64,000 bases of DNA from Caecitellus pseudoparvulus. Lineage: Eukaryota; Protista; Bigyra: Bicosoecida. The translations under genes and the position numbers were made by a program. Shown piece by piece: positions 18,673 to 52,631 of the stretch. The stretch lies in NCBI GenBank assembly GCA_965644315.1, contig CBFFRQ010000008.1:42927-106926 (forward strand). The letters are read 5' to 3'. Below the pieces are notes generated by a model that was not told where the DNA came from, did no database searches, and saw only the letters and a list, made by a program, of their open reading frames with translations. The stretch's first letter is position 1, and each line of letters opens with the position of its first letter.

Positions 18673-18677
18673 CGCCT

Positions 18678-19330: not shown

Positions 19331-19832
19331 GGCAGGCAATGACGCCGTGATCAAGCTGTCTCGGTGCTGCTCGAGTCAAGCCCCGCCCAATTGACGGATC
19401 GCCACCCAACTCTCCACTCCACAACAATGACTGTCATGCCACATTCAACACTGACACACGACACACAGCGAAGTTCACATTAAGTGTTTACATGCAACAG
19501 CAGCTCAGCGTTTATTCACCTAGATTGAGTAAGTTGACAAGGTGGGCGTTTTGCCGCCAGTACTTTCGACGGCGGTGCCCAAGCAGCCATCCCTGCCCCA
19601 CGCCAGCACACCGTCAACTTCCCCCGCTAGCAGCACTCCTGCAGCCATCGCTGCGCAGAGGACAGACGTGTCGGAGTGGACTGGACGTGGCCACTGCTGC
19701 TCTGACTCGCCACAGCCTGCTTCCCCAGTTTGCCGACCGCACTCGACTGCACAGCTCCTGCCCACAGCCTGCACACCACACACAGCGCTTCTTGCCGTTG
19801 AGGTGCACACAGGGACTCCACTTCTAGCGGTC

Positions 19833-22800
19833 ATGGGTGGCCCCGCTGGTCCCACTGCACTTGTGCCTGCCCAGGCTGCTCGCCAGCCACGTCTGCGGCA
19901 GTGCAGACCGCTGCAACGCCTGGCACTTCCCTGCGTCATTGCACTATGCTTTGCGCTGCTGCCCATCGTCCACTGCATCACTAACGAGACGCTTCCACAG
20001 GCACTGCAACGCCAACTGCGTTTTCAGTCCTATGAGCCGATTCCCGCCTCCGCGTGGAGTGCAGGCGTCGCGGGCGATACGCTGGCCCTGAGCACAAAAG
20101 CACGCATTGGCGCCAGCTCACACAGCACAGAGCACAATGCGACGCTGTTCGTGGAGGCTGCCCACGTGTCTGTGCATGAGGAGCTCCTGAGGTGGGACTT
20201 CAACATCAGCGTCAACGGCAGCCTGCCCCTTGCAGGCAACGCCTCCTCCGCTGCCATGCCACACGTCAGCTTCTGGGCAGTGGGCACGATGGTGGACCTG
20301 TTCGTGCAGGACCACGCGCCCATGCCGTGGGCCAACCGCAGCACCTGGCGCAACGCCTCCGCCACCATCCCGCTCCGTGCCGAGGGCTCCAGCACTGTGC
20401 ACGAGGTGACGCTGCAAGGACCAGCCAACCTCTTCGTCATCTTCAAACTCGTGTGGACGCAGGGCTACCCCGAGCCCCGCGTGGCCTGCCACACAGTGCA
20501 CAGGTGGCATCACTGGGCGTGGCAGCGTGTGGACGGTGCTCGGCTGTGCTCGGGGCTGGTGTGGGGCCACCCAGTCCTGCCCTCACACATCACACCCGCC
20601 CCGACGCCGGCTCACCCTCGCGCCTGGACACCAGGCACACACCACCTGCGTGCCGTGCTGCACGCTCCAGTGCAGGATGCATTGCTGCCCTTCCACATGG
20701 CTGCCGCTCTGCAACACCCACAAGATGGCCCGGTGCTCTTGGAGATCCGAGGCCTCCAGCTGCATTCCCTGCGAGCACTGCCTGAGGGCCCAGCAGCAGT
20801 CAGCTGGTCAGTGCAAGCGTGGACTGCGGGGCAGCGTGTGCATGACCCTGGCAGTGGGCCACCTCACCCCCCTCGTGTGGAGCTCGTGCCAGTGACACTG
20901 AGCACCAAAATGGTCAGCATCGGAGACACGCACGCATGTGCCATCACCGGTCCACATGCTGGGGTCAAGTGCTTCGGGGCAGGCGGCAACAAGCTCAACT
21001 TCTTCGCTGGCAAGGGCCGCCTGGGCTACGGCGGCATCGACAACGTCGGCGTGGAGAAGACCCTGAAAGACGTCCCCTTCGTGCAGCTGCCCCGCCCAGC
21101 CAGGCACATCCGAGCGGGGCAGCTGGCGACGTGTGCCACCCTCAACAACGGCACGCTGTACTGCTGGGGTGAGGGCGGCACGGGCATCTTGGGCCACGGC
21201 GGTGGGCATGATGTCGGGGATGACCCGGGTGAGACACCCCTGTCCTCCGGCCCCGTGCCCGTCGTGGGACGCGTCACCATGACAGCCATCGGCGAGCAGC
21301 ACGCCTGTGCTCTGCTGGACACAGGGCATGTGCGCTGCTGGGGCAGTGGCCTCGGAGGACGCACTGGGTACGCGTCACAGAGCCCAATCCTGGACGCGTC
21401 CACAGCCGGCATCGTGCGCCTGTCTGACCTGGCCGTGTCCATTGACTCCATGTGGGGCTTCACATGTGCTCTGCTGGTGAGTGCCGATGTGCAGTGCTGG
21501 GGCACAGGGTCCTTTGAGCCGCTCGCAGGCGGCGCTGGGTGGCTGGGCCTGGGGTACCTCACTGATGTGGGGGACAATGAGCACCCTGCTGACGTCGGGC
21601 CCGTGCCGTTGGGCGGCAAGGTGCTGGACATGTCAGTGGGCATGTTCCACGCCTGTGCGTTGATGCTGTCTGGGGGTGTGCGGTGCTGGGGTGCCAACGA
21701 TGAGTCCATTCCATTTAGTGGAGGCAATACTTTTCCACTCTCTGGACGTCTGGGCATCGGCAGCACCGCCAGCATGGGTGACAATGAGCCTGCCTCCGCC
21801 TCCCCCATCATCCAGCTGCCGTGGGAGGTGACCAGCATCTGTTCGTCATTCTGGAACAACTGTGTCACGACCGTGAGCGGGCAGTCCATGTGCTGGGGTG
21901 GCGAGGACTATGGTGAGGCGGGCGTGGGGCGTCAAAAGTACCCATACAGTGTGATGGCGAAGCGGTCCATCGGGGACGATGAAGTGCCGTGGATGCAAGG
22001 GTGGATGCAGAATGGCGCCCCCGTCAGCTTCATGAGCTGCGGCACCGCCAGTCAGTTCATCGGCCTGCAGGGCGGCGGCATCCGCTACATCGGCGCGCTG
22101 GGAGAGGGGCGCTCAGCAACAGGCAAGCTGCGCATCGCAGACGCACGACGATATGAGGCACACCAGGTCGTCCTCACGCCACAAGTATTGCATGCAAAGC
22201 TTGCAGCAGTGAGTGTGCTGCGCCTGGCCGCTCCTGAGTTCACAGACACAGCCAGTATTCACGCAGGATACAACTTCGCATGCGCGTTGACGCGGTGGAA
22301 GGGTGTCAGGTGTTGGGGCCAAAGTTTTAATCTCAAGCTGGGGAGAGAAGAGCCTTCCACGCATGTCGGCCGTGTCAACCTGGGACAACGTTCCACCGCA
22401 CTGCTGCTGCCTGGCCCGGTAGAGGAGCTGTCTATTCAAGCGCGTCACGCTTGTGCTCGACTGCAAGATGCTAGCGTGCGCTGCTGGGGGAACAACGGGG
22501 ACTCTCAGGCTGGTGCTGGCGACTGGTTCGAGTCAGCAGCATCTTCTACCCCGATTGCACTTGGTGGGACGCCTGTGACCATCGAGGCCGGCCGCTCCCA
22601 CTCCTGCGCTGTGCTATCGTCAGGACAGGTGCAGTGCTGGGGAGTCAATGTGTATGGTGAGAGATTCCACCCGAACTCGTATGAATCTTCATCAGGTCAG
22701 CCTGCCAATGCCATCGCTCCTGCCAGGCAGGTGTGCGCTGGTTTTCACCTGACATGCCTGCTGCTCGATGACGGCCGTGTCCAGTGTGTTGGCAACACGC

Positions 22801-25800
22801 ACTGGGGCATCCAGGGAACAGGGAGCACTTTCTACACGTCAGAGACGACCCCTCTGACCACGTTGAATGCTGTAGGCACCGTGCAGCTGTCTGAGCCTGC
22901 CAGCTCCATTGTCTGCGGTGTTCACCACGCTTGTGCAGTGCTGGCCAGTGGGTCTGTGCAATGCTGGGGCAGGGGGGGCGATCCTCGAATCTGGCGAGCC
23001 AGGCTCGGACAGCCGGGCTTGACCAGCAGTCACATTGGAGACGACGAGACACCAGCCTCCCTCGGCCCTGTGCAGCTGTCTGGACCTGCTGTCGCGGTGG
23101 AAGCGGGGCCATACCAGTCCTGTGCAGTGCTCGCTACAGGCCACTTGCAGTGCTGGGGCTGGAACTTCAAGGGAGAGCTCTTCTACGGCCACACCGACAC
23201 CGTCGGCGCCACCAACACACCGCACCAGGCTGGGCTCTCCCCACTGCCCCCCACAGTGCAACAGGTGGCCGCTGGCTACGAGGCCACCTGCGTCCTGCTG
23301 CATGGCGGGCACATTCGGTGTGTCGGCGACAATGCTCAGGGCCTGCTGGGCTCGGGCTTCCCGGGCATTGTGGGCCAGCACGGGCTGCCTCGCTACATGC
23401 TCAACCCATCCCCACAAGTGCTGGACCTGGGGCAGCATGTGGCCATTTCCTCCCTGCTGCCTGGTCTCCGCGCCCTGGGCAGTGTCATGCAGTGGGCCAG
23501 CATTGCCCAGGTGCGCTCGTGCCCCTCCTGCCCCATGAAGGACGTGGAGTCCCTCCCACCCTGGCTCATGAGCGTCATGCGCGGGGCCGAGTTCATCGAC
23601 ATGCTGCCCCCTGCCGCCTCCACCGGCATTCTGTGCCGGCAGCGCGGCATGCCGACGCGCTCTGGAGTGGACCTGTGTGCACCTTACCAAGCCTGCAGTC
23701 GTAACCTGGATGCATCTGCTGAGCTGCAGCCCTTCGCTGAGACGTGTGTGTGGCCCGAAGACTGGTCCATGGCCACCATCCTCCAAGTGACTGCTGTGAC
23801 TGACCAGGCTGCACAAGGCAAGCCTGCAGTGTCGCCTGCCGCGGGGGGACTGCAGGTGAAACTGGTGGGGCGCTTCTGGCCCCTCACCATTCTCCGTCGC
23901 GAAGCCGTGCCGTTTACTGTCTTGATAGGTGCCGCGCCCTGCACAGCCCCTCAGCTGGCGTCCGTGTCAGAGCTGACGTGCATCACGCCTCCACTGCCGA
24001 GCACAAACCTCACCTCAGGCGCTGCCATCCGCATCGAGCACAGCGTCCCCAATGTCCCCAGCCCTGTGCGGAGTCCGCCTGATGTGGTGGTGCAGTATGC
24101 GCCGCCACTGCTGAGCTTCGTGCAGCCAGCCCAGGATCTCCCCGTCACGGGCGCAGACGTGACTGTGCGTGGCGCGCACCTCGGCCAGACGCTGTCCAGC
24201 ACGGCCAGTGTGCCGTGGCTCTTGCCGCTGGCTGCTGTGCACATTGCTGTGCTGGAGCACCCCCTCGAAGCGGCTCCAGCGTCCCGCTGCAACGTAACGT
24301 CAGTGTCAGTGGCGTCCATTCAGTGCACCATGCCGCCTGGCCTGGGCACGGTGTGGCTGCGTGTCACTGTGGCTGGGCAAACCGCCCTAGACATGCTACA
24401 GGTGTCATATGCGGCGCCACTCGTCACTTCAGTCGTGCCTGCCACTCTCCTGTGGTCCCCGCCTGCCAACGCCAGCCAGGCATCGCTCCACATCCACGGG
24501 TCAGCTCTGGGACTGCGAGCCCAGGACTTGGACGTGACTGTCGCTGGCGCACCCTGTGGACAGATCCTGTGGCATGACAGCACCCATATCGAGTGTGCTG
24601 CCGTGAACACCAGTGCCGTGGACACATCGGCATCATCGGGAGATGTCATGCTTCGTGTGCTGCCCACTGGCCACGAGACAAGCCTGTCGGCAGCAGTGCG
24701 TGTCTTCGGACCCATGCGCGTCACAGGCGCAGTTCCACTGACTGTCCCATGGGGAGGCGGCACTATGACTGTGTTTGGGCTGGAGTTCGGCCTGCTGGGA
24801 GTTGGGGGGAGCATCGACGCAGTGACCATGAACGGCGTGCCCTGCACCGGAGTTGTGGTGTCGGCATCTTCCCTCTCGTGCTCCCTGCCGCCCGGAGTCG
24901 GTGGGCTGTCCCCCATCGTTGTGCGGCGTGCCGCCGGCGCCGAGGCCCAGTTTGTCAGTGCGTCCTTGGCGTATGACCCGCCCCGTCTCAGCCACACACA
25001 GCCCAGCGTCTTGTCTGCAGCGTTGCCTGGAGCTCAAGGCACCACCACTCTGACTGTGTATGGCCAAGGCTTCGGCCGGCCGGGTGCTTCCCAGGTGCAG
25101 GCAACGGTTGGATCACAGACGTGCGTCGTACAGCACGTGTCCAACACCACGCTCCTGTGCACGGGCCTGAATGCGACGGCACTGCTGGCCGTAGCAAGTG
25201 CAACAGTGCAAGTGACAGTGGCTGGGCGCCCCTGTCCGTCGCCGTTAAACCTGCGCGTGCTGCAGAAGCCATCAGTGGCGGCCATGCAACCGTCGGTCGT
25301 GACGGCTGCGGGAGGCACAGAGGTGACGCTGCTGGGTGTGGACTTCGGGGGGGGGGCTCTTTCCGATGTGCAGGAGGTGCTGATTGGCGCCGCCACCTGT
25401 GCCATCCTGACGGTGAGCTCCACCAGCATTCGCTGCAGGACACCTTCCAAGCAAGCCGCTGGCGGGAGCCCTGTGGCGGCCACCGTGCGCCTTGCCTCTG
25501 GCTTCCAGGACACTCTGCCCAATGCCCTGATCTACACTGAAGCAGAGATCTTCCGCGTCGAAGGGGGCACCCTCATGCCTGCCGCTCGCCTGGGGGTCGC
25601 CACAGCGACACTGAGCGCTTTTGGCCTGGCCTTGGGTGCACCGGGCATGGCCAGTCCTGGCAATGTGTCCATCGCGGGTGTCGACTGTGCTGCGGCAGGT
25701 GGTGTTGTCAGCCTTGCTGCCAATGCCCGCAGTGTGACGTGTGACGGACTCGACCCTGGCGTCCTGCCACAGCAACAGGCTGGCTCAGCCACGACTGTGC

Positions 25801-28376: not shown

Positions 28377-29006
28377 GCCATCCTTCACCTTATCCAAATG
28401 CATGGTTTGTTATTTTACTCACAAAAGTAAGGTATCAAGCATTCCCAACCCATTTAGCTGACGCAGGTGAGCGTATCATGCTTGAAGCATGCTCTCCCAT
28501 ACAAAAATCTCCAGGTCGCTGCATGCCCAAGGCTGTGTCCGCCGCGGTCACCCAGAAAACAGACCTTTCCGATTCCCAGAGCGAAATTCAAACAGCAAAT
28601 ACAAGCTCTGCTAACACTTCGTTTCCAGCAGTGTCTGAAAACAAGTGCTGCGCGGTGGCTCAATCAAATCTGCACCATCAGAAAGCCACGCCAGCAAGAC
28701 ACACTCAAACACCTCCACGCACAAGGCGCTTGCGACACTCATTCACAGCGCCAAGGATGCCATTCTCAACAAGAGCCACAAAGCTCACCATGCTGCTTCC
28801 GCGCACATACTCTGCTCGGCAGTGCACAGGCGAGCGCTCCCCGTCCAAGTCTTGGCCAGCATACTCAAAGCAGCCACCGAGCACAAGCTTCACGGACGGT
28901 CCATGGTGCAGCTTGCAACAGCCTGTCTCCCCCACCGACAGCAGGCCCAGGTGCGCCGCCGCACATCCCGACGCCCACACAGCAAGCGCACCAAACCTTG
29001 ACGCCT

Positions 29007-31150
29007 TCACCTCCACTTGCGGCGCCGAGCACTGGCAAGCGCCCGAGCAGCCAACACAGCCGCGCCACACACACAACAGCCAAAGCCCACAGCCAGCCCC
29101 AACCTCCAAACATCCCACGAGCAAGGCTGCAGCCATGGCAACCCTGACCCAAGCCCCACCCACAGCGTCTGATTCATCGTCACGTACGGTGCGAATGACT
29201 CCCCCCCCACCACAGCCACGCCTCGAGATGCTTGCAAAAGACACACCTCAGCGCCAGACGCTGGTGGACTTGCCCACTCATGACCCGCCAACGGATGAGC
29301 TGCCAGCGACCCCTGATGCCGTCCAAGCGCCACACGCCCACCATCCAACCTGCACACTGACCGGCGCAACCAAGACTGAACCGCCAATCGCTCCCTGCAC
29401 ACTGGTGTGAGGCAGTGCCACTTTCGCTGAACCCTCCCTTCCCGCAGCGCTGCCGCTGCACAAGCCACGGCGTGCTCACCGAAACCCCCCACATCAAACG
29501 AATCAGACGACACTGCTCCCAGCACACGCTGAACCTCCCTGCACTCGGCACACGCAGCGCCACCACAAGCGGCAGCGTCAATCATGGCACACTGTCCTGG
29601 CGTCAAGCTGCGCTCTTGACTCCAAACCACCCCATCACCAGTCACCTCAGCTGCCCACACGTCGTCCAGGTCCACACAGCCAGGAGCACACTGCGCACCC
29701 GACACAAGCACCAGCCTGCTGCGCGATGTAGCCACCTGCATGCCCATGCTGCGAGGTGCCGGCCATGCTGCCGAAGCCCGCACTGCCCGCAACAAGGCCC
29801 ACGTCACTGGGCGCCCCTGCTCCACGCTGCCACGCCACAGATCCCCAAGCACCAACCCCGCGCTGCTGCCCCGCGTGCGGAACTGGTGCCGCTCCAGCCC
29901 ACCCTGCAAAGCAGCCTGGACTGAGCACTGCGAACACGCCCCTCCGAACAAGAACAACGCCCCGCCACCGCCGTCGCGTGTGCTTGCATGGAACGTCATG
30001 TGCCCAGAGTGCCGACTGAGCGGCCACCGCCCAGTGACACTGTCAGCAACACACCCTGCAGAGCTCGAGTGCTCCAGCACAGACACACTGCCTGTCGCCT
30101 GCACTGACAAGCTCCACAGCTCGCATGAGTCCGCCAAGGGCGACGCAGATCCGCCCAACCGCCCCGCAAGAACACGACCCACGCCAGTGTCCCCAAGGCT
30201 CTTCAACTCCCCCTCCATCGCCTCCACCGAGCCGGTGACCTGAGACAGCAGCCCCCCAAACACCCACACCGCACGAAGAGCGTACTGCCCATCACCTCCC
30301 CCCACCTCGTAACTCGCAGTGGAAGCAGCTGAGGCACGGGCCAGCAACGCCTCAGCCAGCGACGCGGACAACCGAGACTGCTGCACAGAGGCACCCACGT
30401 GCCCCCAAAAGTACTCCTCCACTCGGGACCACCGGATGACCTGCTGGCCAGCGACATCTGCCTCCTCCCCCATCCACACCCTGCCATGGCTCGTACCGGG
30501 TGCATAGTGAAAGGCCGCCGCATCGAGCCCGGGGGCAGCACAGGCGTCTGACCCCCCTTTGCCCACGTCGCCCCCCAGCACCAACATGCCCCGCGGACCC
30601 ACAGCAGCTGTGAGACAGGAAGGGGGGCGCTTGCACAACACTCACCGTGGCTGGCACCGCACAGCTCACTCACAAACCACTGCGTTCATGCGGGGACATG
30701 GCACCACCCCTCCAGCCTCCCGTGGCACCATGGCCACCCGGCGAGGCGGGGAGCAGTCTGCAGCCTGGTGCACACCGGTTCCATGCCTGCGAAAGAGAAC
30801 CAGCGCAGCCTCAGTGACAGCGTCGCCCCAGGAGCGTCCCCGTGCCAACACCATGCGCTTCGGCAGTGTGCACGCTCAACAGAGCCAGCCGCTCTCCCTG
30901 GCCGCGCTCAGCAACCCAGCACACGCAGCCCCACGCACCACTCAGGACCCTGCTCCGACATCTGGTACCCAAACACAGACGTGAACCACACCTTCGATGC
31001 CGCGCCCTGCACCGTGGAGCAGTTGGCACGGAGGACGGCGCTGGCGCCGAAACGTGCGCGAAACTCCCCACACCCTCGCAGCACCTGAACCTCGCCCGCA
31101 GCACAGCAGAGGCTCAAGGTGACCAATGCCGATAGACACCCACGATGCAT
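29007..31150 (-). CDS. Kelch-repeat-like protein with signal peptide and C-terminal TM plus basic tail, copy 2; 5' introns not resolved
   Basis: N-terminus MHRGCLSALVTLSLCCAAG; kelch-like WPLSRHSGH...LFLFGG...LGDLW and WPAPRSMG...LVLVSG...LDDVW; ends LGLAVGFGCCVCGAAVLAARALASARRRKWR. Confidence 0.65.
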
Positions 31151-31652
31151 GGCAGGCGATGACGCCGTGACCAAGCTGTCTCGGTGCTGCTCGAGTCAAG
31201 CCCCGCCCAATTGACGGATCGCCACCCAACTCTCCACTCCACAACAATGACTGTCATGCCACATTCAACACTGACACACGACACACAGCGAGGTTCACTT
31301 TTAGTGTTTACGTGCAACAGCAGCTCAGCGTTTTTCCACCTAGATTGAGTAAGTTGACAAGGTGGGAGTTTTGCCGCCAGTACTTTCGACGGCGGTGCGC
31401 AAGCAGCCATCCCTGCTCCACGCCAGCACACCGTCGGGTTCCCCCACAACAAGCCCTCCTGCAGCCATCGCTGTATAGATCACAGACGTGTCGGGGTGGA
31501 CTGGACGTGGCCATTGCTGCTCTGACTCGCCACGGCCTGCTTCCCCAGTTTGCCGGCCGCACTCGACTGCACAGCTCTTGCCCACAGCCTGCACACCCCA
31601 CACAGCGCTTCTTGCCGTTGACGTGCACACAGGGACTCCACTTCTTTCAGCC

Positions 31653-40424: not shown

Positions 40425-41055
40425 GCCACCTTTCAAACAATCACGTTTTCAAAATGCATGATCTGCAGGTTTATTCGCGGCGGTAAGGTGCCAGGCATTC
40501 CCAAACCCATCCAGCAGACGCTGGGGAGCGTATCTTGACTCTCTCCCGCGCACAAACACCTCAACTTGCTGCCAGCCCAAGGCCATACCCGCCGCAGCCG
40601 TTCGAAAGAAAAACCGTTCCGATCCACAAAAGCAGGACCTAATCGGCAAACTAGGCTCTGAAGTTTTGCGATTGCCTGCAAAACAATAACCAAATGCTTC
40701 CCTGCGGAACAATCAGCCTTGCAGTATCGTAAAGCCACCCCAGCAAGACACAGTCCAACGCCTCCACGCATAAGGCGCTCGCGACACTCATTCACAGCGC
40801 CAAGGATGCCATTCTCAACAAGAGCCACAAAGCTCACCATGCTGCTTCCGCGCACGTCCTCTGCTCGGCAGTGCATAGGCGAGCGCTCCCCGTCCAAGTC
40901 TTGGCCAGCATACTCAAAGCAGCCACCGAGCACAAGTTTCACGGACAGCCCATGGTGCAGCTTGCAACAGCCTGTCTCCCCCACCGACAGCAAGTCCAGG
41001 TGCGCCGCCGCACATCCCGACGCCCACACAGCAAGCGCACCAAGCCTTGACGCCT

Positions 41056-43202: not shown

Positions 43203-43706
43203 GGCAGGCAATGACGCCGCGATCAAGCTGTCTCGGTGCTGCTCGAGTCAAGCCCCGCCCAATTGACGGATCGCCACCCAACTCTCCACTCCACAACAAT
43301 GACTGTCATGCCACATTCAACACTGACACCCGACACGCAGTAAAGCATACATGAGCGTATTTACTTTCAGCTTCACCTTAGGAATTGAGCTGCAGGACTT
43401 GGAAAGTGGCCGGCGTGGTACCTCTGCTATCAGCACTTTTTGCAGGAGGCTTGCAGGCAACCAACCCTGCTCCACGCCAGCACACCGTCGGGTTCCCCCA
43501 CAACAAGCCCTCCTGCAGCATTCACTGTGCAGAGGACAGACGTGTCGGGGTGGGCCGGACGTGGCCACTGCTGCTCTGACTCGCCACGGCCTGCATCCCC
43601 AGTTTGCCGGCCGCACTCGACTGCACAGCTCCTGCCCACAGCCTGCACACCACACACAGCGCTTCCTGCCGTTGAAGTGCACACAAGGACTCCACTTCTA
43701 GCGGTC

Positions 43707-46700
43707 ATGGGTGGTCCCACTGGTCACCCTGCACTTGTGCCTGCCCAGGCTGCTCGCCAGCCACGTCTGCGGCAGTGCAGACCGCTGCAACGCCTGGCAC
43801 TTCCCTGCGTCATTGCACTATGCTTTGCGCTGCTGCCCATCGGCCGCGGTGTCATAAACGAGACGTTTCCACAGGCACTACAACGTCAACTGCGTTTTCA
43901 GTCCTATGAGCCGATTCCCGCCTCCGCGTGGAGTGCAGGCGTCGCAGGCGACACGCTGGCCCTGAGCACAAAAGCACGCATTGGCGCCAGCTCACACAGC
44001 ACAGAGCACGATGCGACGCTGCTCGTGGAGGCCGCCCACGTGTCTGTGCATGAGGAGCTCCTGAGGTGGGACTTCAACATCAGCGTCAACGGCAGCCTGC
44101 CCCTTGCAGGCAACGCCTCCTCCGCTGCCATGCCACACGTCAGCTTCTGGGCAGTGGGCACGATGGTGGACCTGTTCGTGCAGGACCACGCGCCCATGCC
44201 GTGGGCCAACCGCAGCACCTGGCGCAACGCCTCCGCCACCATCCCGCTCCGTGCCGAGGGCTCCAGCACTGTGCACGAGGTGACGCTGCAAGGACCAGCC
44301 AACCTCTTCGTCATCTTCAAACTCGTGTGGACGCAGGGCTACCCCGAGCCCCGCGTGGCCTGCCACACAGTGCACAGGTGGCACCACTGGGCGTGGCAGC
44401 GTGTGGACGGTGCTCGGCTGTGCTCGGGGCTGGTGTGGGGCCACCCAGTCCTGCCCTCACACATCACACCCGCCCCGACGCCGGCTCACCCTCGCGCCTG
44501 GACACCAGGCACACACCACCTGCGTGCCGTGCTGCACGCTCCAGTGCAGGATGCATTGCTGCCCTTCCACATGGCTGCCGCTCTGCAACACCCACAAGAT
44601 GACCCTGTGCACTTGGAGATCCGAGGCCTCCAGATGCATTCCCTGCGAGCACTGCCTGAGGGCCCAGCAGCAGTCAGCTGGTCAGTGCAAGCGTGGAGTG
44701 CGGGGCAGCGTGTGCATGACCCTGGCAGTGGGCCACCTCACCCCCCTCGTGTCGAGCTCGTGCCAGTGACACTGAGCACCAAAATGGTCAGCATCGGAGA
44801 TACGCACGCATGTGCCATCACCGGTCCACATGCTGGGGTCAAGTGCTTCGGGGCAGGCGGCAACAAGCTCAACTTCTTCGCTGGCAAGGGCCGCCTGGGC
44901 TACGGCGGCATCGACAACGTCGGCGTGGAGAAGACGCTGAAAGACGTCCCCTTCGTGCAGCTGCCCCGCCCAGCCAGGCACATCCGAGCGGGGCAGCTGG
45001 CGACGTGTGCCACCCTCAACAACGGCACGCTGTACTGCTGGGGTGAGGGCGGCACGGGCATCTTGGGCCACGGCGGCGGGCATGATGTCGGGGACGACCC
45101 GGGTGAGACACCCCTGTCCTCCGGCCCCGTGCCCGTCGTGGGGCGCGTCACCATGACAGCCATCGGCGAGCAGCACGCCTGTGCTCTGCTGGACACAGGG
45201 CATGTGCGCTGCTGGGGCAGTGGCCTCGGAGGACGCACTGGGTACGCGTCGCAGAGCCCAATCCTGGACGCATCCACGGCCGGCATCGTGCGCCTGTCTG
45301 ACCTGGCCGTTTCCATTGACTCCATGTGGGGCTTCACATGTGCTCTGCTGGTGAGTGCCGATGTGCAGTGCTGGGGCACAGGGTCCTTTGAGCCGCTCGC
45401 AGGCGGCGCTGGGTGGCTGGGCCTGGGGTACCTCACCGATGTGGGGGACAATGAGCACCCTGCTGACGTCGGGCCCGTGCCGTTGGGCGGCAAGGTGCTG
45501 GACATGTCAGTGGGCATGTTCCACGCCTGTGCGTTGATGCTGTCTGGGGGTGTGCGGTGCTGGGGTGCCAACGATGAGTCCTTTCAGTTTAGTGGAGGTC
45601 TCTCATTTCCACTTTCTGGGCGCTTGGGCATCGGCAGCACAGCAAGCATGGGTGACGATGAGCCTGCCTCCGCCTCCCCCATCATCCAGCTGCCGTGGGA
45701 GGTGACCAGCATCTGTTCGTCATTCTGGAACAACTGTGTCACCACCGTGAGCGGGCAGTCCATGTGCTGGGGTGGCGAGGACTATGGTGAGGCGGGCGTG
45801 GGGCGTCAGAAGTACCCAGAAAGTGTGACGGAGAAGCGGTCCATCGGGGACGATGAAGTGCCGTGGATGCAGGGGTGGATGCAGAATGGCGCCCCCGTCA
45901 GCTTCATGAGCTGCGGCACCGCCAGTCAGTTCATTGGCCTGCAAGGCGGCGGCATCCGCTACATCGGCGCGCTGGGAGAGGGGCGCTCAGCAACAGGCAA
46001 GCTGCGCATCGCGGATACACGACGATATGAAGCACACCAGGTCATCCTCACACCACAAGCACTGCATGCAAAGCTTGCAGCAGTGAGTGTGCTGCGCCTG
46101 GCCGCTCCTGAGTTCACAGACACAGCCAGTATTCACATCGGGGACACCGTCGCATGCGCGCTGACGCGGTGGAAGGGTGTCAGGTGCTGGGGCCAGAACG
46201 TTTGGTTGAGGCTGGGAAGGGAAGAGCCTTCCACACATGTCGGGCGTGTCAGCCTGGGACAACGTTCCACGGCACTGCTGCTGCCTGGCCCGGTGGAGGA
46301 GCTGTCTGTTGGCTCAGATCACTCTTGTGCTCGACTGCAAGATACTACCGTGCGCTGCTGGGGGAACAACTGGGATTACCAAGGCGGAACTGGCCACTGG
46401 TACCTCTCAGCGGCATCCTCCACCCCAATTGCACTTGGTGGGACGCCAGTGGCCATCGCGGCCGGCCGCTCCCACTCCTGCGCTGTGCTATCGTCAGGAC
46501 AGGTGCAGTGCTGGGGACGTAATCTGTACGGTGAGAGATTCCACCCAAACTCGTACGTCTCATCGTCAGGTCAGCCTGCCAATGCCATCGCTCCTGCCAG
46601 GCAGGTGTGCGCTGGTTTTCACCTGACATGCCTGCTGCTCGATGACGGCCGCGTTCAGTGCGTTGGGTACACCTACTGGGGCATCCAGGGAACTGGAAGC

Positions 46701-49700
46701 ACCTTCTACACGACGGATACAACCTCTTTGTCCACGCTGAACTCGGTAGGCACCGTGCAGCTGTCTGAGCCTGCCAGCTCCATATCATGTGGCGACCATC
46801 ACGCTTGTGCAGTGCTGGCCAGCGGGTCTGTGCAATGCTGGGGCGCTGGCGGGTATTCGACGACCTTGCGGGCCAGGCTTGGACAGCCGGGCTTGACCAG
46901 CAGTCACATTGGAGACAACGAGACACCAGCCTCCCTCGGCCCTGTGCAGCTGTCTGGACCTGCTGTCGCGGTGGAAGCGGGCCCCATCCAATCCTGTGCA
47001 GTGCTCGCTACAGGCCATTTGCAGTGCTGGGGCCGGAACTTCAAGGGAGAGCTCTTCTACGGCCACACCGACACCGTCGGCGCCACCATCACACCGCATC
47101 AGGCTGGGCTCTCCCCACTGCCCCCCACAGTGCAGCAGGTGGCCGCTGGCTACGAGGCCACCTGCGTCCTGCTGCATGGCGGGCACATTCGGTGTGTCGG
47201 TGACAATTCTCAGGGCCTGCTGGGCTCGGGCTTCCCGGGCATCGTGGGCCAACATGGACTGCCTCGCTACATGCTCAACCCATCCCCACAAGTGCTAGAC
47301 CTGGGGCAGCATGTGGCCATTTCCTCCCTGCTGCCTGGTCTCCGCGCCCTGGGCAGTGTCATGCAGTGGGCCAGCATTGCCCAGGTACGCTCATGCCCCT
47401 CCTGCCCCATGAAGGACGTGGAGTCCCTCCCACCCTGGCTCATGAGCGTCATGCGTGGGGCCGAGTTCATCGACATGCTGCCCCCTGCCGCCTCCACCGG
47501 CATTCTGTGCCGGCAGCGCGGCATGCCGACGCGCTCTGGAGTGGACCTGTGTGCACCTTACCAAGCCTGCAGTCGTGACTTGGATGCATCTGCTGAGCTG
47601 CAGCCCTTCGCTGAGACGTGTGTGTGGCCCGAAGACTGGTCCATGGCCACCATCCTCCAAGTGACTGCCGTGACTGACCAGGCTGCACAAGGCAAGCCTG
47701 CAGTGTCGCCTGCCGCGGGGGGCCTGCAGGTGAAGCTGGTGGGGCGCTTCTGGCCCCTCACCATTCTCCGTCGCGAAGCCGTGCCGTTCACTGTCTTGAT
47801 AGGTGCCGCGCCCTGCACAGCCCCTCAGCTGGCGTCCGTGTCAGAGCTGACGTGCATCACGCCTCCACTGCCGAGCACAAACCTCACCTCCGGCGCTGCC
47901 ATCCGCATCGAGCACAGCGTCCCCAATGTCCCCAGCCCTGTGCGGAGTCCGCCTGATGTGGTGGTGCAGTATGCGCCGCCGCTGCTGAGCTTCGTGCAGC
48001 CAGCCCAGGATCTCCCCGTCACGGGCGCAGACGTGACTGTGCGTGGCGCGCACCTCGGCCAGACGCTGTCCAGCACGGCCAGTGTGCCTTGGCTCTTGCC
48101 GCTGGCTGCTGTGCACGTTGCTGTGCTGGAGCACCCCCTCGATGCGGCTCCAGCATCCCGCTGCAACGTGACGTCAGTGTCAGTGGCGTCCATTCAGTGC
48201 ACCATGCCGCCTGGCCTGGGCACGGTGTGGCTGCGTGTCACTGTGGCTGGGCAAACTGCCCTAGACATGCTACAGGTGTCATACGCGGCGCCCCTCGTCA
48301 CTTCAGTGGCGCCTGCCACTCTCCTGTGGTCCCCACCTGCCAACGCCAGCCAGGCGTCGCTCCACATCCACGGGTCAGCTCTGGGACTGCGAGCCCAGGA
48401 CTTGGACGTGACTGTCGCTGGCGCACCCTGTGGACAGATCTTGTGGCATGACAGCACCCACATCGAGTGTGCTGCCGTGAACACCAGTGCCGTGGACACA
48501 TCGGCTTCATCGGGAGATGTCATGCTTCGTGTGCTGTCCACTGGCCACGAGACAAGCCTGTCGGCAGCAGTGCGTGTCTTCGGACCCATGCGCGTCACAG
48601 GCGCAGCTCCATTGACTGTCCCATGGGGAGGCGGCGCCATGACTGTGTTTGGGCTGGAGTTTGGCCTGCTGGGAGTTGGGGGAAGCATCGACGCAGTGAC
48701 CATGAACGGCGTGCCCTGCACCGGAGTTGTGGTGTCGGCATCTTCTCTCTCGTGCTCCCTGCCGCCAGGAGTCGGTGGACTGTCCCCCATCGTTGTGCGG
48801 CGTGCCGCCGGCGCCGAGGCCCAGTTTGTCAGTGCGTCCTTGGCGTATGACACGCCCCGTCTCAGCCACACACAGCCCAGCGTCTTGTCTGCAGCGTTGC
48901 CTGGAGCTCAAGGCACCACCACTCTGACTGTGCACGGCCAAGGCTTCGGCCAGCCGGGTGCTTGCCCGGTGCAAGCAACGGTTGGATCACAGACGTGCGT
49001 CGTGCAGCATGTGTCCAACACCACGCTCCTGTGCACGGGCCTGAATGCGACGGCACTGCTCGCCGTAGCAAGTGCAACGGTGCAAGTAACTGTGGCTGGG
49101 CGCCCCTGCCCGTCGCCGTTAAACCTGCGCGTGCTGCAGAAGCCATCTGTGGCGGCCATGCAACCGTCGGTCGTGACGGCTGCGGGAGGCACGGAGGTGA
49201 CGCTGCTGGGTGTGGACTTCGGGGGGGGGGCTCTTTCCGATGTGCAGGAGGTGCTGATTGGTGCCGCCACCTGTGCCATCCTGCAGGTGAGCTCCACCAG
49301 CATCCGTTGCAGGACACCTTCCAAGCAAGTCGCTGGCGGGAGCCCTGTGGCGGCCACTGTGCGCCTTGCCTCTGGCTTCCAGGACACTCTGCCCAATGCC
49401 CTGATCTACACTGAAGCAGAGATCTTCCGCGTCGAAGGGGGCACCCTCATGCCTGCCGCTCGCCTGGGGGTCGCCACAGCGACACTCAGCGCTTTTGGCC
49501 TGGCCTTGGGTGCACCGGGCATGGCCAGTCCTGGCAATGTGTCCATCGCGGGTGTCGACTGTGCTGCGGCAGGTGGTGTTGCCAGCCTTGCTGCCAATGC
49601 CCGCAGTGTGACGTGTGACGGACTCGACCCTGGCTTCCTGCCACAGCAACAGGCTGGCTCAGCCACGACTGTGCAGCTGGTCGTAACGACCAATGAAGGC

Positions 49701-52478
49701 CTGCAGCTGACTGCACCTGCTGGCACGGTGCAGCTCCTGGGGCCACCACAAGTGGAAGCGCTGGTCCCGCCGCAGGTGCGTGCAGGGGAAGCCGTCGCTG
49801 TGCTCGGGCGCAACTTCGGCCTGCACCGTGGCGACGTTCAGGAGGTGCTGGTCGGCAGCATACCCGTGCCAGACGAGGCGTGGGAGTGGAACAGCCAGGG
49901 CAGCATCAGCATCACGGCTGTGCCCGAACCTGCCACCTTGGTCCTGTCCAGCCTCGTAGATCTGCCAGTGGTGCTGCGCCTGGCCAACGGCCACAGTGCA
50001 GTGTCCACCTCCCCAGCTGTCTTGACGTACGACGTGCCGCCCTCTGCCCCCCGCAACGCACCAGGCGAGCCCTGCCTGTACCGCGAGGGGCCAGGCGGCA
50101 ACATCAGGGCAAGCTTCCTGTGGGAAGATGACACTGCCACTCGACTTTCGCCTGTTGCGGCATGGATCGTGCATGTGTCTGTGCAGCCCTGGATGGAGGG
50201 CGGGCGGTACACCCAGCGAGTCGTGCCGACATCAGGCGAGTCGGTGGGCGACGTGCTGGTGTCGGACGCAGGGATTGGGCCGTGCAGTCACTTGCGAGTG
50301 GATGGGAGGAGCTCATCCACTCGTGTCATTGACTTGCGCATTCTGGAGTCGCCTCAACGCCCCGTGTGGGTGCGTGTCAGTGCGGCAACAGGCGTGGCAG
50401 ACCCTGCCCTGCGCGGCCCGCCCAGTGCTGTGGGTGGGCCAGTCTTCCCCCAGTGCCTGCCAGCGCAGTACATTGCCACTCAGCACGCGAGGCAGGGGCG
50501 GTGGGGTGGCGCCGTGTGCCTTGCCTGTCCCGATGGCGCCGTGTGTGGGGGCCTGCCGTGGGAAGGCATGCGGGCGGCTGCAGGCTACTACAGGGTGCCC
50601 TGGAGCGAGCATGGCCTGACGTTCCAGCGGTGCACAGACCCGACACTGTGCCCGCCAGCGGTCAATGTGCGCTTGACTGCGCAGCAGCTGGCGTATGTGC
50701 GCCCCCAATGGAACGTGACACGCCCCAACTCCACGTCAGAAGGGCAGCACCCCGGTCTGCCGGCAGCTTTCCAGGCCCAGCAGCTGGACATCCAAGCACC
50801 TGCCGAGGACGGCTTCACTGTGCAGCAGGGCGACGCATCGAACTCCTCCGCTGCAGAGCTGGCCGTGGCCTCGAACTGTGTTGCTGGGCACACTGGCCCC
50901 ATGTGCAGCAAGTGCGCTGTGGGGTATGGGCGCCTGGGCACGCCCCAGTGTGCGCCGTGTGAGGGTGGGTCCAGTCGCTCCATCGGGCTGATTTTCGTCT
51001 TCTTCGTACTCATGGTGGCGGTGGTGGTGTGGCTGGTGCGGGGTCAAGTGCGGACTCGTGGCTTGAGCAAAAAAGCGCACAGTGTTGCCAAGAAAGTCCT
51101 CGTCACGCACATACAGCAGACTGCCCTCATGATGTCCTTTGACCTGGAGTGGCCAGACCCCTTCAAGACTCTGCTTGCTGTGTCTGACACAGCTGCTGCC
51201 AGCAGCGCACAAATCGCATCCCTGGACTGCGTGCGCTCCAAGGAGGTGCCCAACGCGCCCAGCTCCTCCTTCCGCATGCAGGTTCTCCTCACAGTGGCCG
51301 CCCCTGCCATCATCCTCTCCGTATGCCTCCTGGGTGCTTTCGGGCTGGCTGCGCTGAAGTCTCGCCCCGACTGGGCTGAGGCTCGCCGCCGCGTCATTGT
51401 CGCCGTCCTGGTCGTGGCGTTCTTGTTTTACACGCCTCTCACTCGCACAGTCATGCAGCTGTTTACATGTGTGAGTGTGGGCGGGGAGCAGCGCCTGCTG
51501 AATGACTTGGAGGTGCTGTGTGACTCGTCTGGAAACTTGGCGTGGGTGTATGGCTTGGGCGTGCCGCTGCTCGTGGTGTTCGTCGCTGGCATGCCAGCGG
51601 CCATTGCCCACACCCTGTACAGTCGACGCACTCGTCTGCAAGACTCATCATGGCACCGCCGCACATTCGGCCTCATGTACTTGGGCTACAAGCCGCAGTA
51701 CTACTGGTACGAGGTGGTCATCATGGCCCGCAAGGCCCTGTTCGCCATGGTGCTCGTGGCGCTGCGCCCCATCGGGCTCCTGTGGCAAATGGCATTCGGC
51801 ATGCTCGTGCTGTCTGCAGCCTGCATCGCCTCTGCCACCTGGGCGCCCTTCATCAACCCCACCTTCAACTCCCTCGACTTGGCATCCTTGGCGCTGTCCA
51901 TGACCACACTGGCAGGCGGCGCCATTCTGTACCAGGGCGCAGTGGAGCAGCGCAGAGCAGACGCAGTCGGTGGCTCGCCGCCGTGGCCTCACTACAGTGT
52001 TGCAGGCCAGACTGTGACTGTGCTGCTCACCTTGGCCAATATCATCTTCGTCGTGGGCATGGTGGCTTGGATGGTGCGCTCCTTCTACAACGAGGAGATC
52101 TCCCCCCGCCTCAGCGTCGCCAAAGCCAAGCACAAAGAGGGCATCTTGAAGGCGTCTCGGCTGCATCAAAAGCTTGCCAAGGTCAGCAAGCTCTCTGACA
52201 AGCCCAAGAGCTCCGTGCTGGGGAAGGCTGGAGCTGTGCAGTCCCCAGATGCTGCGACTGTTGGGCAGGGTGCCAAGCATGCACCTGTCAGCGCTCCGGA
52301 CACGCCAGTTGCTGAATCATCACAAACAGGCATGGCCCAATCCCCTGTGGTTGCTCGTGGACGCGCACCCCAGGAGAAGACAGCCGTTGCAGCCGTTGCA
52401 GGAAGGTCAGTGTTGACGCCTGGCAGCCGTGCTGCACGTGTGCGAGCGAACTTGGCTGGGCCGCAATCGAGAAAGTAA
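43707..52478 (+). CDS. Giant RCC1-TIG-multiTM putative receptor, copy 3 (full length)
   Basis: Same length as copy 2 (offset 12054). Uninterrupted frame. Confidence 0.9.
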   Translation: MGGPTGHPALVPAQAARQPRLRQCRPLQRLALPCVIALCFALLPIGRGVINETFPQALQRQLRFQSYEPIPASAWSAGVAGDTLALSTKARIGASSHSTEHDATLLVEAAHVSVHEELLRWDFNISVNGSLPLAGNASSAAMPHVSFWAVGTMVDLFVQDHAPMPWANRSTWRNASATIPLRAEGSSTVHEVTLQGPANLFVIFKLVWTQGYPEPRVACHTVHRWHHWAWQRVDGARLCSGLVWGHPVLPSHITPAPTPAHPRAWTPGTHHLRAVLHAPVQDALLPFHMAAALQHPQDDPVHLEIRGLQMHSLRALPEGPAAVSWSVQAWSAGQRVHDPGSGPPHPPRVELVPVTLSTKMVSIGDTHACAITGPHAGVKCFGAGGNKLNFFAGKGRLGYGGIDNVGVEKTLKDVPFVQLPRPARHIRAGQLATCATLNNGTLYCWGEGGTGILGHGGGHDVGDDPGETPLSSGPVPVVGRVTMTAIGEQHACALLDTGHVRCWGSGLGGRTGYASQSPILDASTAGIVRLSDLAVSIDSMWGFTCALLVSADVQCWGTGSFEPLAGGAGWLGLGYLTDVGDNEHPADVGPVPLGGKVLDMSVGMFHACALMLSGGVRCWGANDESFQFSGGLSFPLSGRLGIGSTASMGDDEPASASPIIQLPWEVTSICSSFWNNCVTTVSGQSMCWGGEDYGEAGVGRQKYPESVTEKRSIGDDEVPWMQGWMQNGAPVSFMSCGTASQFIGLQGGGIRYIGALGEGRSATGKLRIADTRRYEAHQVILTPQALHAKLAAVSVLRLAAPEFTDTASIHIGDTVACALTRWKGVRCWGQNVWLRLGREEPSTHVGRVSLGQRSTALLLPGPVEELSVGSDHSCARLQDTTVRCWGNNWDYQGGTGHWYLSAASSTPIALGGTPVAIAAGRSHSCAVLSSGQVQCWGRNLYGERFHPNSYVSSSGQPANAIAPARQVCAGFHLTCLLLDDGRVQCVGYTYWGIQGTGSTFYTTDTTSLSTLNSVGTVQLSEPASSISCGDHHACAVLASGSVQCWGAGGYSTTLRARLGQPGLTSSHIGDNETPASLGPVQLSGPAVAVEAGPIQSCAVLATGHLQCWGRNFKGELFYGHTDTVGATITPHQAGLSPLPPTVQQVAAGYEATCVLLHGGHIRCVGDNSQGLLGSGFPGIVGQHGLPRYMLNPSPQVLDLGQHVAISSLLPGLRALGSVMQWASIAQVRSCPSCPMKDVESLPPWLMSVMRGAEFIDMLPPAASTGILCRQRGMPTRSGVDLCAPYQACSRDLDASAELQPFAETCVWPEDWSMATILQVTAVTDQAAQGKPAVSPAAGGLQVKLVGRFWPLTILRREAVPFTVLIGAAPCTAPQLASVSELTCITPPLPSTNLTSGAAIRIEHSVPNVPSPVRSPPDVVVQYAPPLLSFVQPAQDLPVTGADVTVRGAHLGQTLSSTASVPWLLPLAAVHVAVLEHPLDAAPASRCNVTSVSVASIQCTMPPGLGTVWLRVTVAGQTALDMLQVSYAAPLVTSVAPATLLWSPPANASQASLHIHGSALGLRAQDLDVTVAGAPCGQILWHDSTHIECAAVNTSAVDTSASSGDVMLRVLSTGHETSLSAAVRVFGPMRVTGAAPLTVPWGGGAMTVFGLEFGLLGVGGSIDAVTMNGVPCTGVVVSASSLSCSLPPGVGGLSPIVVRRAAGAEAQFVSASLAYDTPRLSHTQPSVLSAALPGAQGTTTLTVHGQGFGQPGACPVQATVGSQTCVVQHVSNTTLLCTGLNATALLAVASATVQVTVAGRPCPSPLNLRVLQKPSVAAMQPSVVTAAGGTEVTLLGVDFGGGALSDVQEVLIGAATCAILQVSSTSIRCRTPSKQVAGGSPVAATVRLASGFQDTLPNALIYTEAEIFRVEGGTLMPAARLGVATATLSAFGLALGAPGMASPGNVSIAGVDCAAAGGVASLAANARSVTCDGLDPGFLPQQQAGSATTVQLVVTTNEGLQLTAPAGTVQLLGPPQVEALVPPQVRAGEAVAVLGRNFGLHRGDVQEVLVGSIPVPDEAWEWNSQGSISITAVPEPATLVLSSLVDLPVVLRLANGHSAVSTSPAVLTYDVPPSAPRNAPGEPCLYREGPGGNIRASFLWEDDTATRLSPVAAWIVHVSVQPWMEGGRYTQRVVPTSGESVGDVLVSDAGIGPCSHLRVDGRSSSTRVIDLRILESPQRPVWVRVSAATGVADPALRGPPSAVGGPVFPQCLPAQYIATQHARQGRWGGAVCLACPDGAVCGGLPWEGMRAAAGYYRVPWSEHGLTFQRCTDPTLCPPAVNVRLTAQQLAYVRPQWNVTRPNSTSEGQHPGLPAAFQAQQLDIQAPAEDGFTVQQGDASNSSAAELAVASNCVAGHTGPMCSKCAVGYGRLGTPQCAPCEGGSSRSIGLIFVFFVLMVAVVVWLVRGQVRTRGLSKKAHSVAKKVLVTHIQQTALMMSFDLEWPDPFKTLLAVSDTAAASSAQIASLDCVRSKEVPNAPSSSFRMQVLLTVAAPAIILSVCLLGAFGLAALKSRPDWAEARRRVIVAVLVVAFLFYTPLTRTVMQLFTCVSVGGEQRLLNDLEVLCDSSGNLAWVYGLGVPLLVVFVAGMPAAIAHTLYSRRTRLQDSSWHRRTFGLMYLGYKPQYYWYEVVIMARKALFAMVLVALRPIGLLWQMAFGMLVLSAACIASATWAPFINPTFNSLDLASLALSMTTLAGGAILYQGAVEQRRADAVGGSPPWPHYSVAGQTVTVLLTLANIIFVVGMVAWMVRSFYNEEISPRLSVAKAKHKEGILKASRLHQKLAKVSKLSDKPKSSVLGKAGAVQSPDAATVGQGAKHAPVSAPDTPVAESSQTGMAQSPVVARGRAPQEKTAVAAVAGRSVLTPGSRAARVRANLAGPQSRK

Positions 52479-52631
52479 ACCGCCTTTCAACCAATCACGT
52501 TTACAAAATGCATGATCTGTAGCTTAACTCACGGCGGCAAAGTGTCAAGCATTCGCACAATCCCGACGGCCGGCAAAATTCCCAACCCAGCTTTTCAATG
52601 AAGTGTTCCAGCGACCCGATTAGATGTCAGA

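What the first reader, a model, noticed from the sequence alone, without database searches (positions are those of the whole stretch)
19833..52478. Tandem array of giant double-propeller receptors with hypervariable loops
Seen: three ~2900-aa paralogues, nearly identical over the first propeller, TIG stalk and TM region. Replacements cluster in blades 8-12 (copy 1 ~22255-23060; copy 2 ~34075-34880; copy 3 ~46130-46935). Examples: WGQSFNLKLG / WGQNVWLRLG; WGNNGDSQAGAGDWFES / WGYNWGSRAGSGLWYLS / WGNNWDYQGGTGHWYLS; GNTHWG / GNTHGG / GYTYWG; WGRGGDPRIWR / WGAGGYLATSR / WGAGGYSTTLR. The changes fall at equivalent loop positions and often involve aromatic residues, while the Cys/Trp/Gly scaffold is fixed. 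Inference: a diversifying ligand-binding face on a long stalk, as expected for prey-recognition, anti-viral or self/non-self receptors.
Basis: partly seen in the sequence, partly recalled or inferred. Interest (0 to 1): 0.8.

Follow-up and report, generated by a model that had tools for sequence, protein, structure and literature searches.

The report
Triplicated propeller receptors with divergent tips
A marine single-celled eukaryote carries three neighbouring, about 95% identical genes for a giant surface receptor that differ mainly on one face of one propeller-shaped domain; most likely DNA copying keeps the rest alike while selection keeps different binding tips, a known process seen here in a poorly known receptor family whose targets are unknown.

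Summary
Observation confirmed; interpretation partly supported. Three ~12-kb tandem units (95-96% nt) each encode signal peptide, N-domain, two seven-bladed RCC1/BLIP-II/CRINKLY4-type propellers, IPT/TIG stalk, Cys module and a nine-helix TRP_C-like membrane part. Replacements cluster in blades 8-12: 32/63 apical-loop sites vary versus 30/325 other propeller-2 sites and 4/63 apical sites of propeller 1. But silent divergence rises there too (four-fold sites 18-19% versus 5%), and apical dN/dS is about 1.0-1.1, not above 1. This is a divergence island in converted duplicates, not shown positive selection. Against a self/non-self barcode: another sample carries a copy-1-type head 1% different, and a single-copy paralogue's apical sites are unchanged between samples. 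No DGR or silent donor cassette. Three other paralogue pairs have 97-99.6% identical bodies with saturated heads; one pair shares heads on unrelated bodies. Copy 1 lacks helices 1-2 (228-bp in-frame deletion). Ligand, expression and localisation untested. The scan had already noted this architecture and constant/variable patchworks elsewhere in this genome. New variant of a known kind; interest 0.5.

The parts
18358..52554 (.). Three tandem ~12-kb units (repeat starts 18358, 28687, 40736), 95-96% nt identical including spacers
   Evidence: self-BLASTN
19833..28376 (+). Receptor copy 1, 2847 aa, single open frame; lacks Cys module, helix 1 and most of helix 2
31653..40424 (+). Receptor copy 2, 2923 aa, intact open frame
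43707..52478 (+). Receptor copy 3, 2923 aa, intact open frame
43707..43847 (+). Predicted signal peptide (hydrophobic stretch aa 32-50; copy 1 19833-19973, copy 2 31653-31793)
   Evidence: hydropathy scan; inference
43848..44780 (+). N-terminal domain of unknown family, shared with at least five paralogues; only a weak Ig-like hint (PF24499 below cut-off)
44781..46124 (+). Propeller 1 (blades 1-7), conserved between copies (copy 1 20907-22250, copy 2 32727-34070); apical omega 0.22
46125..47288 (+). Propeller 2 (blades 8-14; copy 1 22251-23414, copy 2 34071-35234); RCC1/UVR8 fold Z 46, BLIP-II Z 25, CR4/ACR4 ectodomain Z 25
22251..23090 (+). Divergence island, blades 8-12, copy 1
34071..34910 (+). 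Divergence island, blades 8-12, copy 2
46125..46964 (+). Divergence island, blades 8-12, copy 3
47682..50036 (+). IPT/TIG stalk, about 785 aa (three stretches pass Pfam PF01833; about eight domains by length, inferred); copy 1 23808-26162, copy 2 35628-37982
50037..50966 (+). Membrane-proximal region with Cys-rich modules (weak DUF7630/DUF7631 hits)
50967..52127 (+). Nine-helix membrane module, TRP_C (PF06011)/DUF7630 class, no solved structural match (copy 2 38913-40073; copy 1 remainder about 27024-28025)
27022..27024 (+). Junction of the 228-bp in-frame deletion in copy 1, between imperfect direct repeats
   Evidence: contig branch at 27023 in run X1 only
29007..30641 (-). 544-codon ORF head-to-head with copy 2; five spaced hydrophobic-GG motifs (Kelch-like, not confirmed by Pfam) and a hydrophobic C-terminus; 18 silent versus 17 replacement codon differences to its twin
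41056..42690 (-). Second copy of the 544-codon ORF, head-to-head with copy 3
18678..18818 (-). 46-codon remnant of the same ORF upstream of copy 1 (1494 bp missing, in frame)

Best explanation
An old local triplication of one surface-receptor gene, kept alike over most of its length by interlocus gene conversion, except across blades 8-12 of the membrane-proximal propeller. There each copy has a different apical binding face, selection rejects conversion tracts that would erase the difference, and so both replacement and silent changes have piled up. The cell thereby holds two or three stable specificities on one chassis; the stalk presents the heads and the nine-helix module relays binding inward. 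Occasional exchange between copies makes blade-level mosaics. Shown: architecture, fold, location of changes, silent island, mosaic site patterns, same layout in other pairs. Inferred: conversion as the cause, selection as the barrier, ligand binding, signalling. Most likely ligands are non-self surfaces met by a marine phagotroph (bacterial prey or substrate first, virus second); this last step is the weakest.
For: Four-fold sites differ at 18-19.5% in blades 8-12 versus 5.2% elsewhere, p<=2e-7 for each pair; per blade 0.15-0.23 in blades 8-12 versus 0.02-0.11 in the other nine, and the same five blades carry the apical replacements. No indel in the island that could block pairing. Apical 32/63 versus 30/325, p 4e-13; propeller 1 apical 4/63; omega 1.0-1.1 versus 0.16-0.19, and 0.22 for propeller-1 apical sites. 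Site patterns come in runs (p<3e-4) and all three 2:2 patterns occur among four sequences; the KB8 copy is copy-2-like in blades 8-11 turns and copy-3-like in blade 11-12 loops. A divergence peak in converting duplicates is the published signature of selection maintaining differences (PMC3924837). Three more RCC1-head pairs show it at full depth: L032/L033 98.2% nt over 5168 bp and 98.3% over the N-domain but four-fold divergence 0.77-0.82 in the heads; L038/L039 99.6% over 3075 bp; L040/L045 97.4% over 3228 bp. BLIP-II binds through apical turns and interblade loops; CR4/ACR4 is an extracellular, disulfide-per-blade propeller receptor (10.1101/2020.08.10.245050). A related species has one copy at the syntenic site (L053).
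Against: Omega above 1 is not shown. Silent divergence falls off with distance from non-apical replacements about as much as from apical ones, so the fine-scale pattern is not specific. Promoter and 3' flank are islands too. In the older pairs the unconverted part runs past the heads into the first stalk domains. Only 3-4 sequences; the KB8 contig is a short-read assembly and could be chimeric. I fixed the apical site set after seeing the alignment, so the p value is partly circular (the same rule applied to propeller 1 is the control). No expression, localisation or ligand data. Copy 1 may be decaying.
Confidence: 0.55

Rival explanations
1. Neutral patchwork: conversion in this genome is patchy, once a tract has diverged it stops converting, and apical loops of propeller 2 simply tolerate change (omega about 1). 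The copies would be functionally equivalent and kept for dosage or not kept at all.
For: Apical omega indistinguishable from 1; non-coding islands in the same units; decay curve not specific to apical sites; copy 1 and its partner ORF both carry deletions; earlier scan notes report patchworks here in which other parts than heads stay different (s1-641860, s1-661143; not checked by me).
Against: Equivalent apical sites of propeller 1 are constrained (omega 0.22, p 4e-4 against 1); in the single-copy paralogue L031 no apical site differs from its allele P0028; the island has no indel and its edges match the blades with apical change; heads are the spared part in three further RCC1 pairs.
Confidence: 0.22
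2. Arms-race or evasion surface: the face is bound by a virus, parasite or toxin, or detects fast-changing pathogen molecules, and is under ongoing diversifying selection with new alleles made by inter-copy recombination.
For: Radical, often multi-nucleotide apical changes (32 of 92 differing apical codons differ at 2-3 bases); the KB8 copy has its own residues at apical sites; whole-propeller-2 mixture test p 0.009, omega2 about 2.
Against: That test loses significance on the island alone, so it reflects uneven divergence time; a copy-1-type head in run X5 differs at only 6 of 570 bases versus 72-80 to copies 2 and 3, so types persist across samples.
Confidence: 0.13
3. Self/non-self or mating-type recognition like Dictyostelium TgrB1/TgrC1: strain-specific heads on TIG stalks read by a partner, perhaps the head-to-head membrane ORF.
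For: [quoted passage not shown]
Against: Variation is between paralogues within one genome, not shown between strains; head types are shared; tgrB1 has local dN/dS above 7 versus about 1 here; in Tgr the Ig-like domains are the ectodomain, here the TIG part is the constant one; the partner ORF has no counterpart at the syntenic locus or other family loci.
Confidence: 0.06
4. Assembly artefact: haplotypes or strains joined in tandem.
For: Copies are 95-96% alike, a level that haplotypes can reach.
Against: Run X1 holds a copy-1-specific contig with 0 differences at depth 27, alternatives at about 58 and shared stretches at 68-103, in line with about three copies; runs X5, X6 and X7 each show several head types; the two internal junction spacers are collinear and differ from each other.
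Confidence: 0.04

Closest known systems
BLIP-II (Streptomyces exfoliatus, PDB 1JTD) and RCC1-like propellers (UVR8, HERC RLD)
   Same: Seven blades with a three-strand meander; structural match Z 46 (UVR8) and 25 (BLIP-II); variable sites align to UVR8's GWRH turn and post-strand loop and correspond to the apical turns and interblade loops with which BLIP-II binds.
   Different: Two propellers in tandem, an invariant Cys pair in each blade, carried on a long stalk and a membrane module; BLIP-II is a small secreted inhibitor, UVR8 and HERC domains are intracellular.
Plant CRINKLY4/ACR4 receptor kinases
   Same: Extracellular seven-bladed propeller with one disulfide per blade and a poorly conserved putative ligand groove, followed by a Cys-rich domain (10.1101/2020.08.10.245050; Z 25).
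   Different: No kinase domain; nine helices instead of one; double propeller and about 800-aa TIG stalk; multigene repertoire.
Eukaryotic Cys-rich plus TRP_C (PF06011)/DUF7630 multi-pass surface proteins
   Same: ESM Atlas first hits at 0.95 are DUF7630 and TRP C-terminal clusters; 22 of 28 aligned relatives hit DUF7630 and 7 hit PF06011; about 60 ORFs in this genome share the module.
   Different: RCC1-type double-propeller head; no paper in the library held RCC1, TIG domain, transmembrane, protist and extracellular together. The query itself passes no Pfam cut-off in this region.
Divergence peaks in gene-converting duplicates (human red/green opsin exon 5; Teshima and Innan model)
   Same: Silent and replacement divergence peak over a functional site with homogenised flanks (PMC3924837).
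   Different: Repeated across a protist receptor family; functional difference between copies not shown here.
Dictyostelium TgrB1/TgrC1 allorecognition proteins
   Same: IPT/TIG domains, tandem duplication, head-to-head neighbour, recombination between paralogues.
   Different: TIG part constant here; no evidence of allelic hyper-polymorphism; local dN/dS about 1 versus above 7; nine-helix base.

Membership tests
RCC1/BLIP-II-type beta-propeller | Seven repeats per domain matching RCC1-like profiles | tested here: met
   PF25390 211-277 bits over cut-off 150, PF13540; 14 repeats
RCC1/BLIP-II-type beta-propeller | Closed seven-bladed fold superposing on solved members | tested here: met
   Model pLDDT 82; propeller 2 on UVR8 Z 46.3, rmsd 2.0 A over 351 residues; BLIP-II Z 25.3. 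Propeller 1 was barely tested on its own.
CRINKLY4/ACR4 receptor kinases | Extracellular propeller with a Cys pair per blade | tested here: met
   Cys pair in 13 of 14 blades; signal peptide by hydropathy; disulfides themselves inferred
CRINKLY4/ACR4 receptor kinases | Single TM helix and cytoplasmic kinase | tested here: not met
   No kinase in Pfam; nine helices
TRP_C (PF06011)/DUF7630 multi-pass proteins | Cys module followed by multi-helix membrane domain matching the family | tested here: inconclusive
   Query below Pfam cut-offs, but relatives hit PF06011 at up to 6.5e-9 and Atlas score 0.95
TRP_C (PF06011)/DUF7630 multi-pass proteins | Channel or signalling activity | not testable with these tools
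   No solved match (best Z 7.1)
Gene-conversion divergence peak (selection-maintained duplicates) | Local peak of silent plus replacement divergence between duplicates | tested here: met
Gene-conversion divergence peak (selection-maintained duplicates) | Paralogues closer than orthologues in flanks, reversed in the peak | tested here: inconclusive
   Only one outside copy (KB8, mosaic) and short contigs of X5-X7; X5's copy-1-type head fits the reversal
Gene-conversion divergence peak (selection-maintained duplicates) | Functional difference between copies | not testable with these tools
   needs binding assays
TgrB1/TgrC1-type allorecognition | Extreme allelic polymorphism with local dN/dS far above 1 | tested here: not met
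   omega about 1; shared head types; paralogue allele 98.5% identical with no apical change. Sample is small.
Diversity-generating retroelement | Template repeat, adenine-specific changes, linked reverse transcriptase | tested here: not met
   Only the three copies match the island; no adenine bias; no RVT_1 match on contig C8
Silent-cassette antigenic variation (VSG, vlsE, pilS type) | Archive of silent donor cassettes for the variable segment | tested here: not met
   (DNA search gives a lower bound only)

The most novel reading that the evidence does not exclude
A free-living protist keeps a germline constant/variable receptor repertoire built on RCC1-type propellers, in which recombination actively makes new specificities at two levels: blade-sized tracts exchanged between tandem copies (KB8 mosaic) and whole heads moved between unrelated stalk and membrane bodies (L037/L043: heads 92.6% nt alike, bodies about 30% aa and on opposite sides of a 98/99-supported split), serving prey or virus recognition.
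Probability: 0.2. Interest if true: 0.8.

Novelty: new variant of a known kind. Interest (0 to 1): 0.5.

Why it matters
How bacterivorous flagellates recognise prey and viruses at the molecular level is largely open (my knowledge; the literature search gave no receptor gene). Here are three natural near-isogenic receptor variants that differ at about 30 residues on one face of a well-modelled 390-aa domain, so a difference in binding can be tested directly. The locus also catches at an early, unsaturated stage the constant-body/variable-head layout that is saturated in older pairs of the family. The evolutionary process itself is known, and function is untested.

Tried and rejected
Positive selection: partition and mixture codon models gave omega about 1 at apical sites; the one significant test vanished on the island alone. 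DGR and cassette systems rejected. More alleles: the JGI metagenome scan and the domain-sized protein search gave only distant, 28-38% relatives; by the operators' note such blanks say nothing about longer or shorter kin. N-domain: no family by Pfam or Atlas. Membrane module: no solved match. Partner ORF: no Pfam, PDB or syntenic counterpart. tblastx of the window against outside loci was mostly noise. PMC8557840 was a false lead (strain names). The big representative-protein search was not used. Organism identity was not tested by me.

Full report
1. Observation. The window lies on contig C8 of a 30.6-Mb, 215-contig eukaryote genome. Neighbours are eukaryotic (Integrator subunit, SHIPPO repeat, RRM, SET/Rubisco-LSMT). 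The DNA occurs in marine samples and the nearest protein, 95% identical, is filed under Symbiodinium sp. KB8, probably from a co-cultured organism (inference). An earlier scan note calls the organism bicosoecid-like; I did not test this. Three units of about 12 kb repeat head-to-tail at 95-96% nt identity, spacers included. Each has a single-frame gene of 2847-2923 aa. Of 128 variable residues in aa 1-2300, 58 fall in one 270-residue window; permutations reach at most 32. The copies look real: the likely source run has a copy-1-specific contig at depth 27, alternatives near 58 and shared stretches at 68-103, and three other studies show several head types (contig depth is a rough guide only).

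2. Anatomy. Signal peptide; a 310-aa N-domain without a family; 14 RCC1-type repeats; an IPT/TIG stalk; Cys modules; a membrane part; a variable tail. The AlphaFold2 model of the repeats (pLDDT 82) has 14 three-stranded blades. Propeller 2 superposes on UVR8 (Z 46, rmsd 2.0 A, 351 residues), BLIP-II (Z 25) and the CR4/ACR4 receptor ectodomains (Z 25). CR4 has a disulfide in every blade (10.1101/2020.08.10.245050), which fits the invariant Cys pairs here and an extracellular place. The membrane part models as nine long helices (pLDDT 81), resembles DUF7630 and TRP_C clusters and has no solved match. About 60 ORFs of this genome share it; at least 15 fetched paralogues join it to 11-15 RCC1 blades.

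3. Where the changes are. I defined apical sites as the three residues of the strand 1-2 turn and the six after the Gly that ends strand 3. In an antiparallel three-strand meander both lie on one face; they align to UVR8's GWRH turn and following loop, and BLIP-II binds through apical turns and interblade loops (10.1101/2024.08.26.609822). In propeller 2, 32 of 63 apical sites vary against 30 of 325 others (p 4e-13); in propeller 1, 4 of 63. The set was fixed after I had seen the alignment, so propeller 1 is the fair control. Apical changes are radical (63% negative BLOSUM62 versus 30% outside) and often multi-base. I had no coordinates, so exposure in the full head is inferred.

4. Selection. 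Silent sites rise with the replacements: four-fold sites differ at 18-19.5% in blades 8-12 and 5.2% elsewhere, with sharp edges at blades 8 and 12 and no indel. Pairwise apical dN/dS is 0.35-0.79. With one silent rate for the segment, apical omega is 1.0-1.1 against 0.16-0.19 for the rest and 0.22 for propeller-1 apical sites; it does not differ from 1. A mixture test over all of propeller 2 gave p 0.009, but on the island alone p is 0.15-0.30, so I do not claim positive selection. The pattern is a peak of divergence in otherwise homogenised duplicates, which is the published mark of selection resisting gene conversion (PMC3924837). Exchange between copies is indicated by runs of shared variants (p<3e-4) and by all three incompatible 2:2 patterns among four sequences; the KB8 copy mixes copy-2 and copy-3 blades with residues of its own, though a chimeric short-read contig cannot be excluded. 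No template repeat, adenine bias, linked reverse transcriptase or donor cassette was found.

5. The family shows the same layout. L032/L033 share 5168 bp at 98.2% (stalk, membrane part, tail) and 666 bp at 98.3% (N-domain), with the break just before blade 1, while their heads are 28-43% identical and saturated at silent sites. L038/L039 share 3075 bp at 99.6%; L040/L045 3228 bp at 97.4%. L037/L043 are the reverse: 92.6% nt over N-domain and heads, about 30% aa in the body, and their membrane parts lie on opposite sides of a 98/99 split while their heads are sisters; this suggests a head moved between bodies (direction not tested; test_one_clade not run; L033, L041, L042, L049, L050, copy 1, P0122 and P0123 dropped out of the trees). 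In these older pairs the unconverted part extends into the first stalk domains, and apical enrichment is significant in only some propellers. Earlier scan notes had already reported such constant/variable pairs and the nine-helix module in this genome; they are leads, not support.

6. Between samples. A related species has one copy (P0121, 38% aa) at the syntenic site beside the SET, SHIPPO, TLD and coiled-coil genes, so the triplication is lineage-specific, unless that assembly collapsed copies. The single-copy paralogue L031 and its allele from an independent metagenome are 98.5% identical with no apical change. Run X5 has a copy-1-type head with 6 differences in 570 bases, where copies 2 and 3 differ at 80 and 72. 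Heads thus look like stable types, which argues against a strain barcode of the TgrB1/TgrC1 kind (local dN/dS above 7 there; PMC13648343). The sample is small.

7. Copy 1 and the spacer. Copy 1 lacks 228 bp between imperfect direct repeats. On the model this removes the last Cys module, helix 1 and most of helix 2, leaving seven helices with parity kept (inference). Only run X1 has a contig branch at this junction; X7 has a contig with the intact form. Each spacer holds a minus-strand 544-codon ORF head-to-head with the next receptor, with 18 silent and 17 replacement codon differences between its two copies and Kelch-like motifs that Pfam does not confirm. Upstream of copy 1 it lacks 1494 bp in frame. 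Unit 1 may be decaying in this strain. Promoter (13-22%) and 3' flank (about 30%) are also divergent, which shows that islands need not be binding sites.

8. Mechanism and verdict. Best reading (0.55): conversion keeps the chassis alike, selection keeps different apical faces on propeller 2, giving a few stable specificities, most likely for non-self surfaces such as prey. Rivals: neutral patchwork with tolerant loops (0.22), virus or parasite arms race (0.13), self/non-self (0.06), assembly artefact (0.04). It works like opsin-type selection-maintained duplicates on a CR4/BLIP-II-like head; it is not a CR4 kinase, a Tgr protein, a DGR target or a cassette system. I found no paper describing this head-stalk-base combination, within the limits of the library. 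Expression, localisation and ligand are untested. New variant of a known kind; interest 0.5.

9. Limits and conduct. Read laying was used once on 5701 letters, on DNA-type contigs.

Noticed in passing
window 27022-27024: 228-bp in-frame deletion in copy 1 removes the last Cys module, helix 1 and most of helix 2; seen as a contig branch only in the likely source run.
   Followed up: yes
window 29007-30641 and 41056-42690 (-); remnant 18678-18818: Co-duplicated 544-codon ORF head-to-head with the receptor; Kelch-like motifs and hydrophobic C-terminus; no family, no other copy in the genome, none at the syntenic locus.
   Followed up: partly
window 28376-28766 and 31134-31500: 3' flank and promoter region of the units diverge 13-30% while the rest of the spacer differs by 1-4%.
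   Followed up: partly
copy 2 versus copy 3, loop after helix 1 (alignment columns 2546-2554) and cytoplasmic tail: Small divergent patches on the cytoplasmic side could mean different downstream partners.
   Followed up: no
L037 (G000:C18:22500-32400) and L043 (G000:C53:13000-22900): Same N-domain and double propeller (92.6% nt over about 3 kb) on unrelated stalk and membrane bodies; both lie near contig ends.
   Followed up: partly
L032/L033 (C50), L038/L039 (C89), L040/L045 (C88, C20): Constant body with saturated heads; L038/L039 show a gradient from near-identical N-domain through propeller 1 (four-fold 0.37) to propeller 2 (0.71).
   Followed up: yes
   Followed up: no
L051 (KB8 contig CAJNDU010011851.1): A protein annotated as HERC2 of Symbiodinium sp. 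KB8 is a near-identical copy of this receptor; the name reflects only the RCC1-like repeats and the contig probably comes from a co-cultured organism.
   Followed up: partly
L053 versus window 14707-62690: Synteny with a related species: TLD, SHIPPO, coiled-coil and SET genes flank a single receptor copy, in rearranged order.
   Followed up: partly
P0127: A 2831-aa EukProt protein joins RCC1-like repeats, a related membrane module and EF-hands, a hint of calcium-linked output in relatives.
   Followed up: no
window 59151-62690 (+): 1179-aa SET/Rubisco-LSMT-type protein, about 50% identical in the related species.
   Followed up: no
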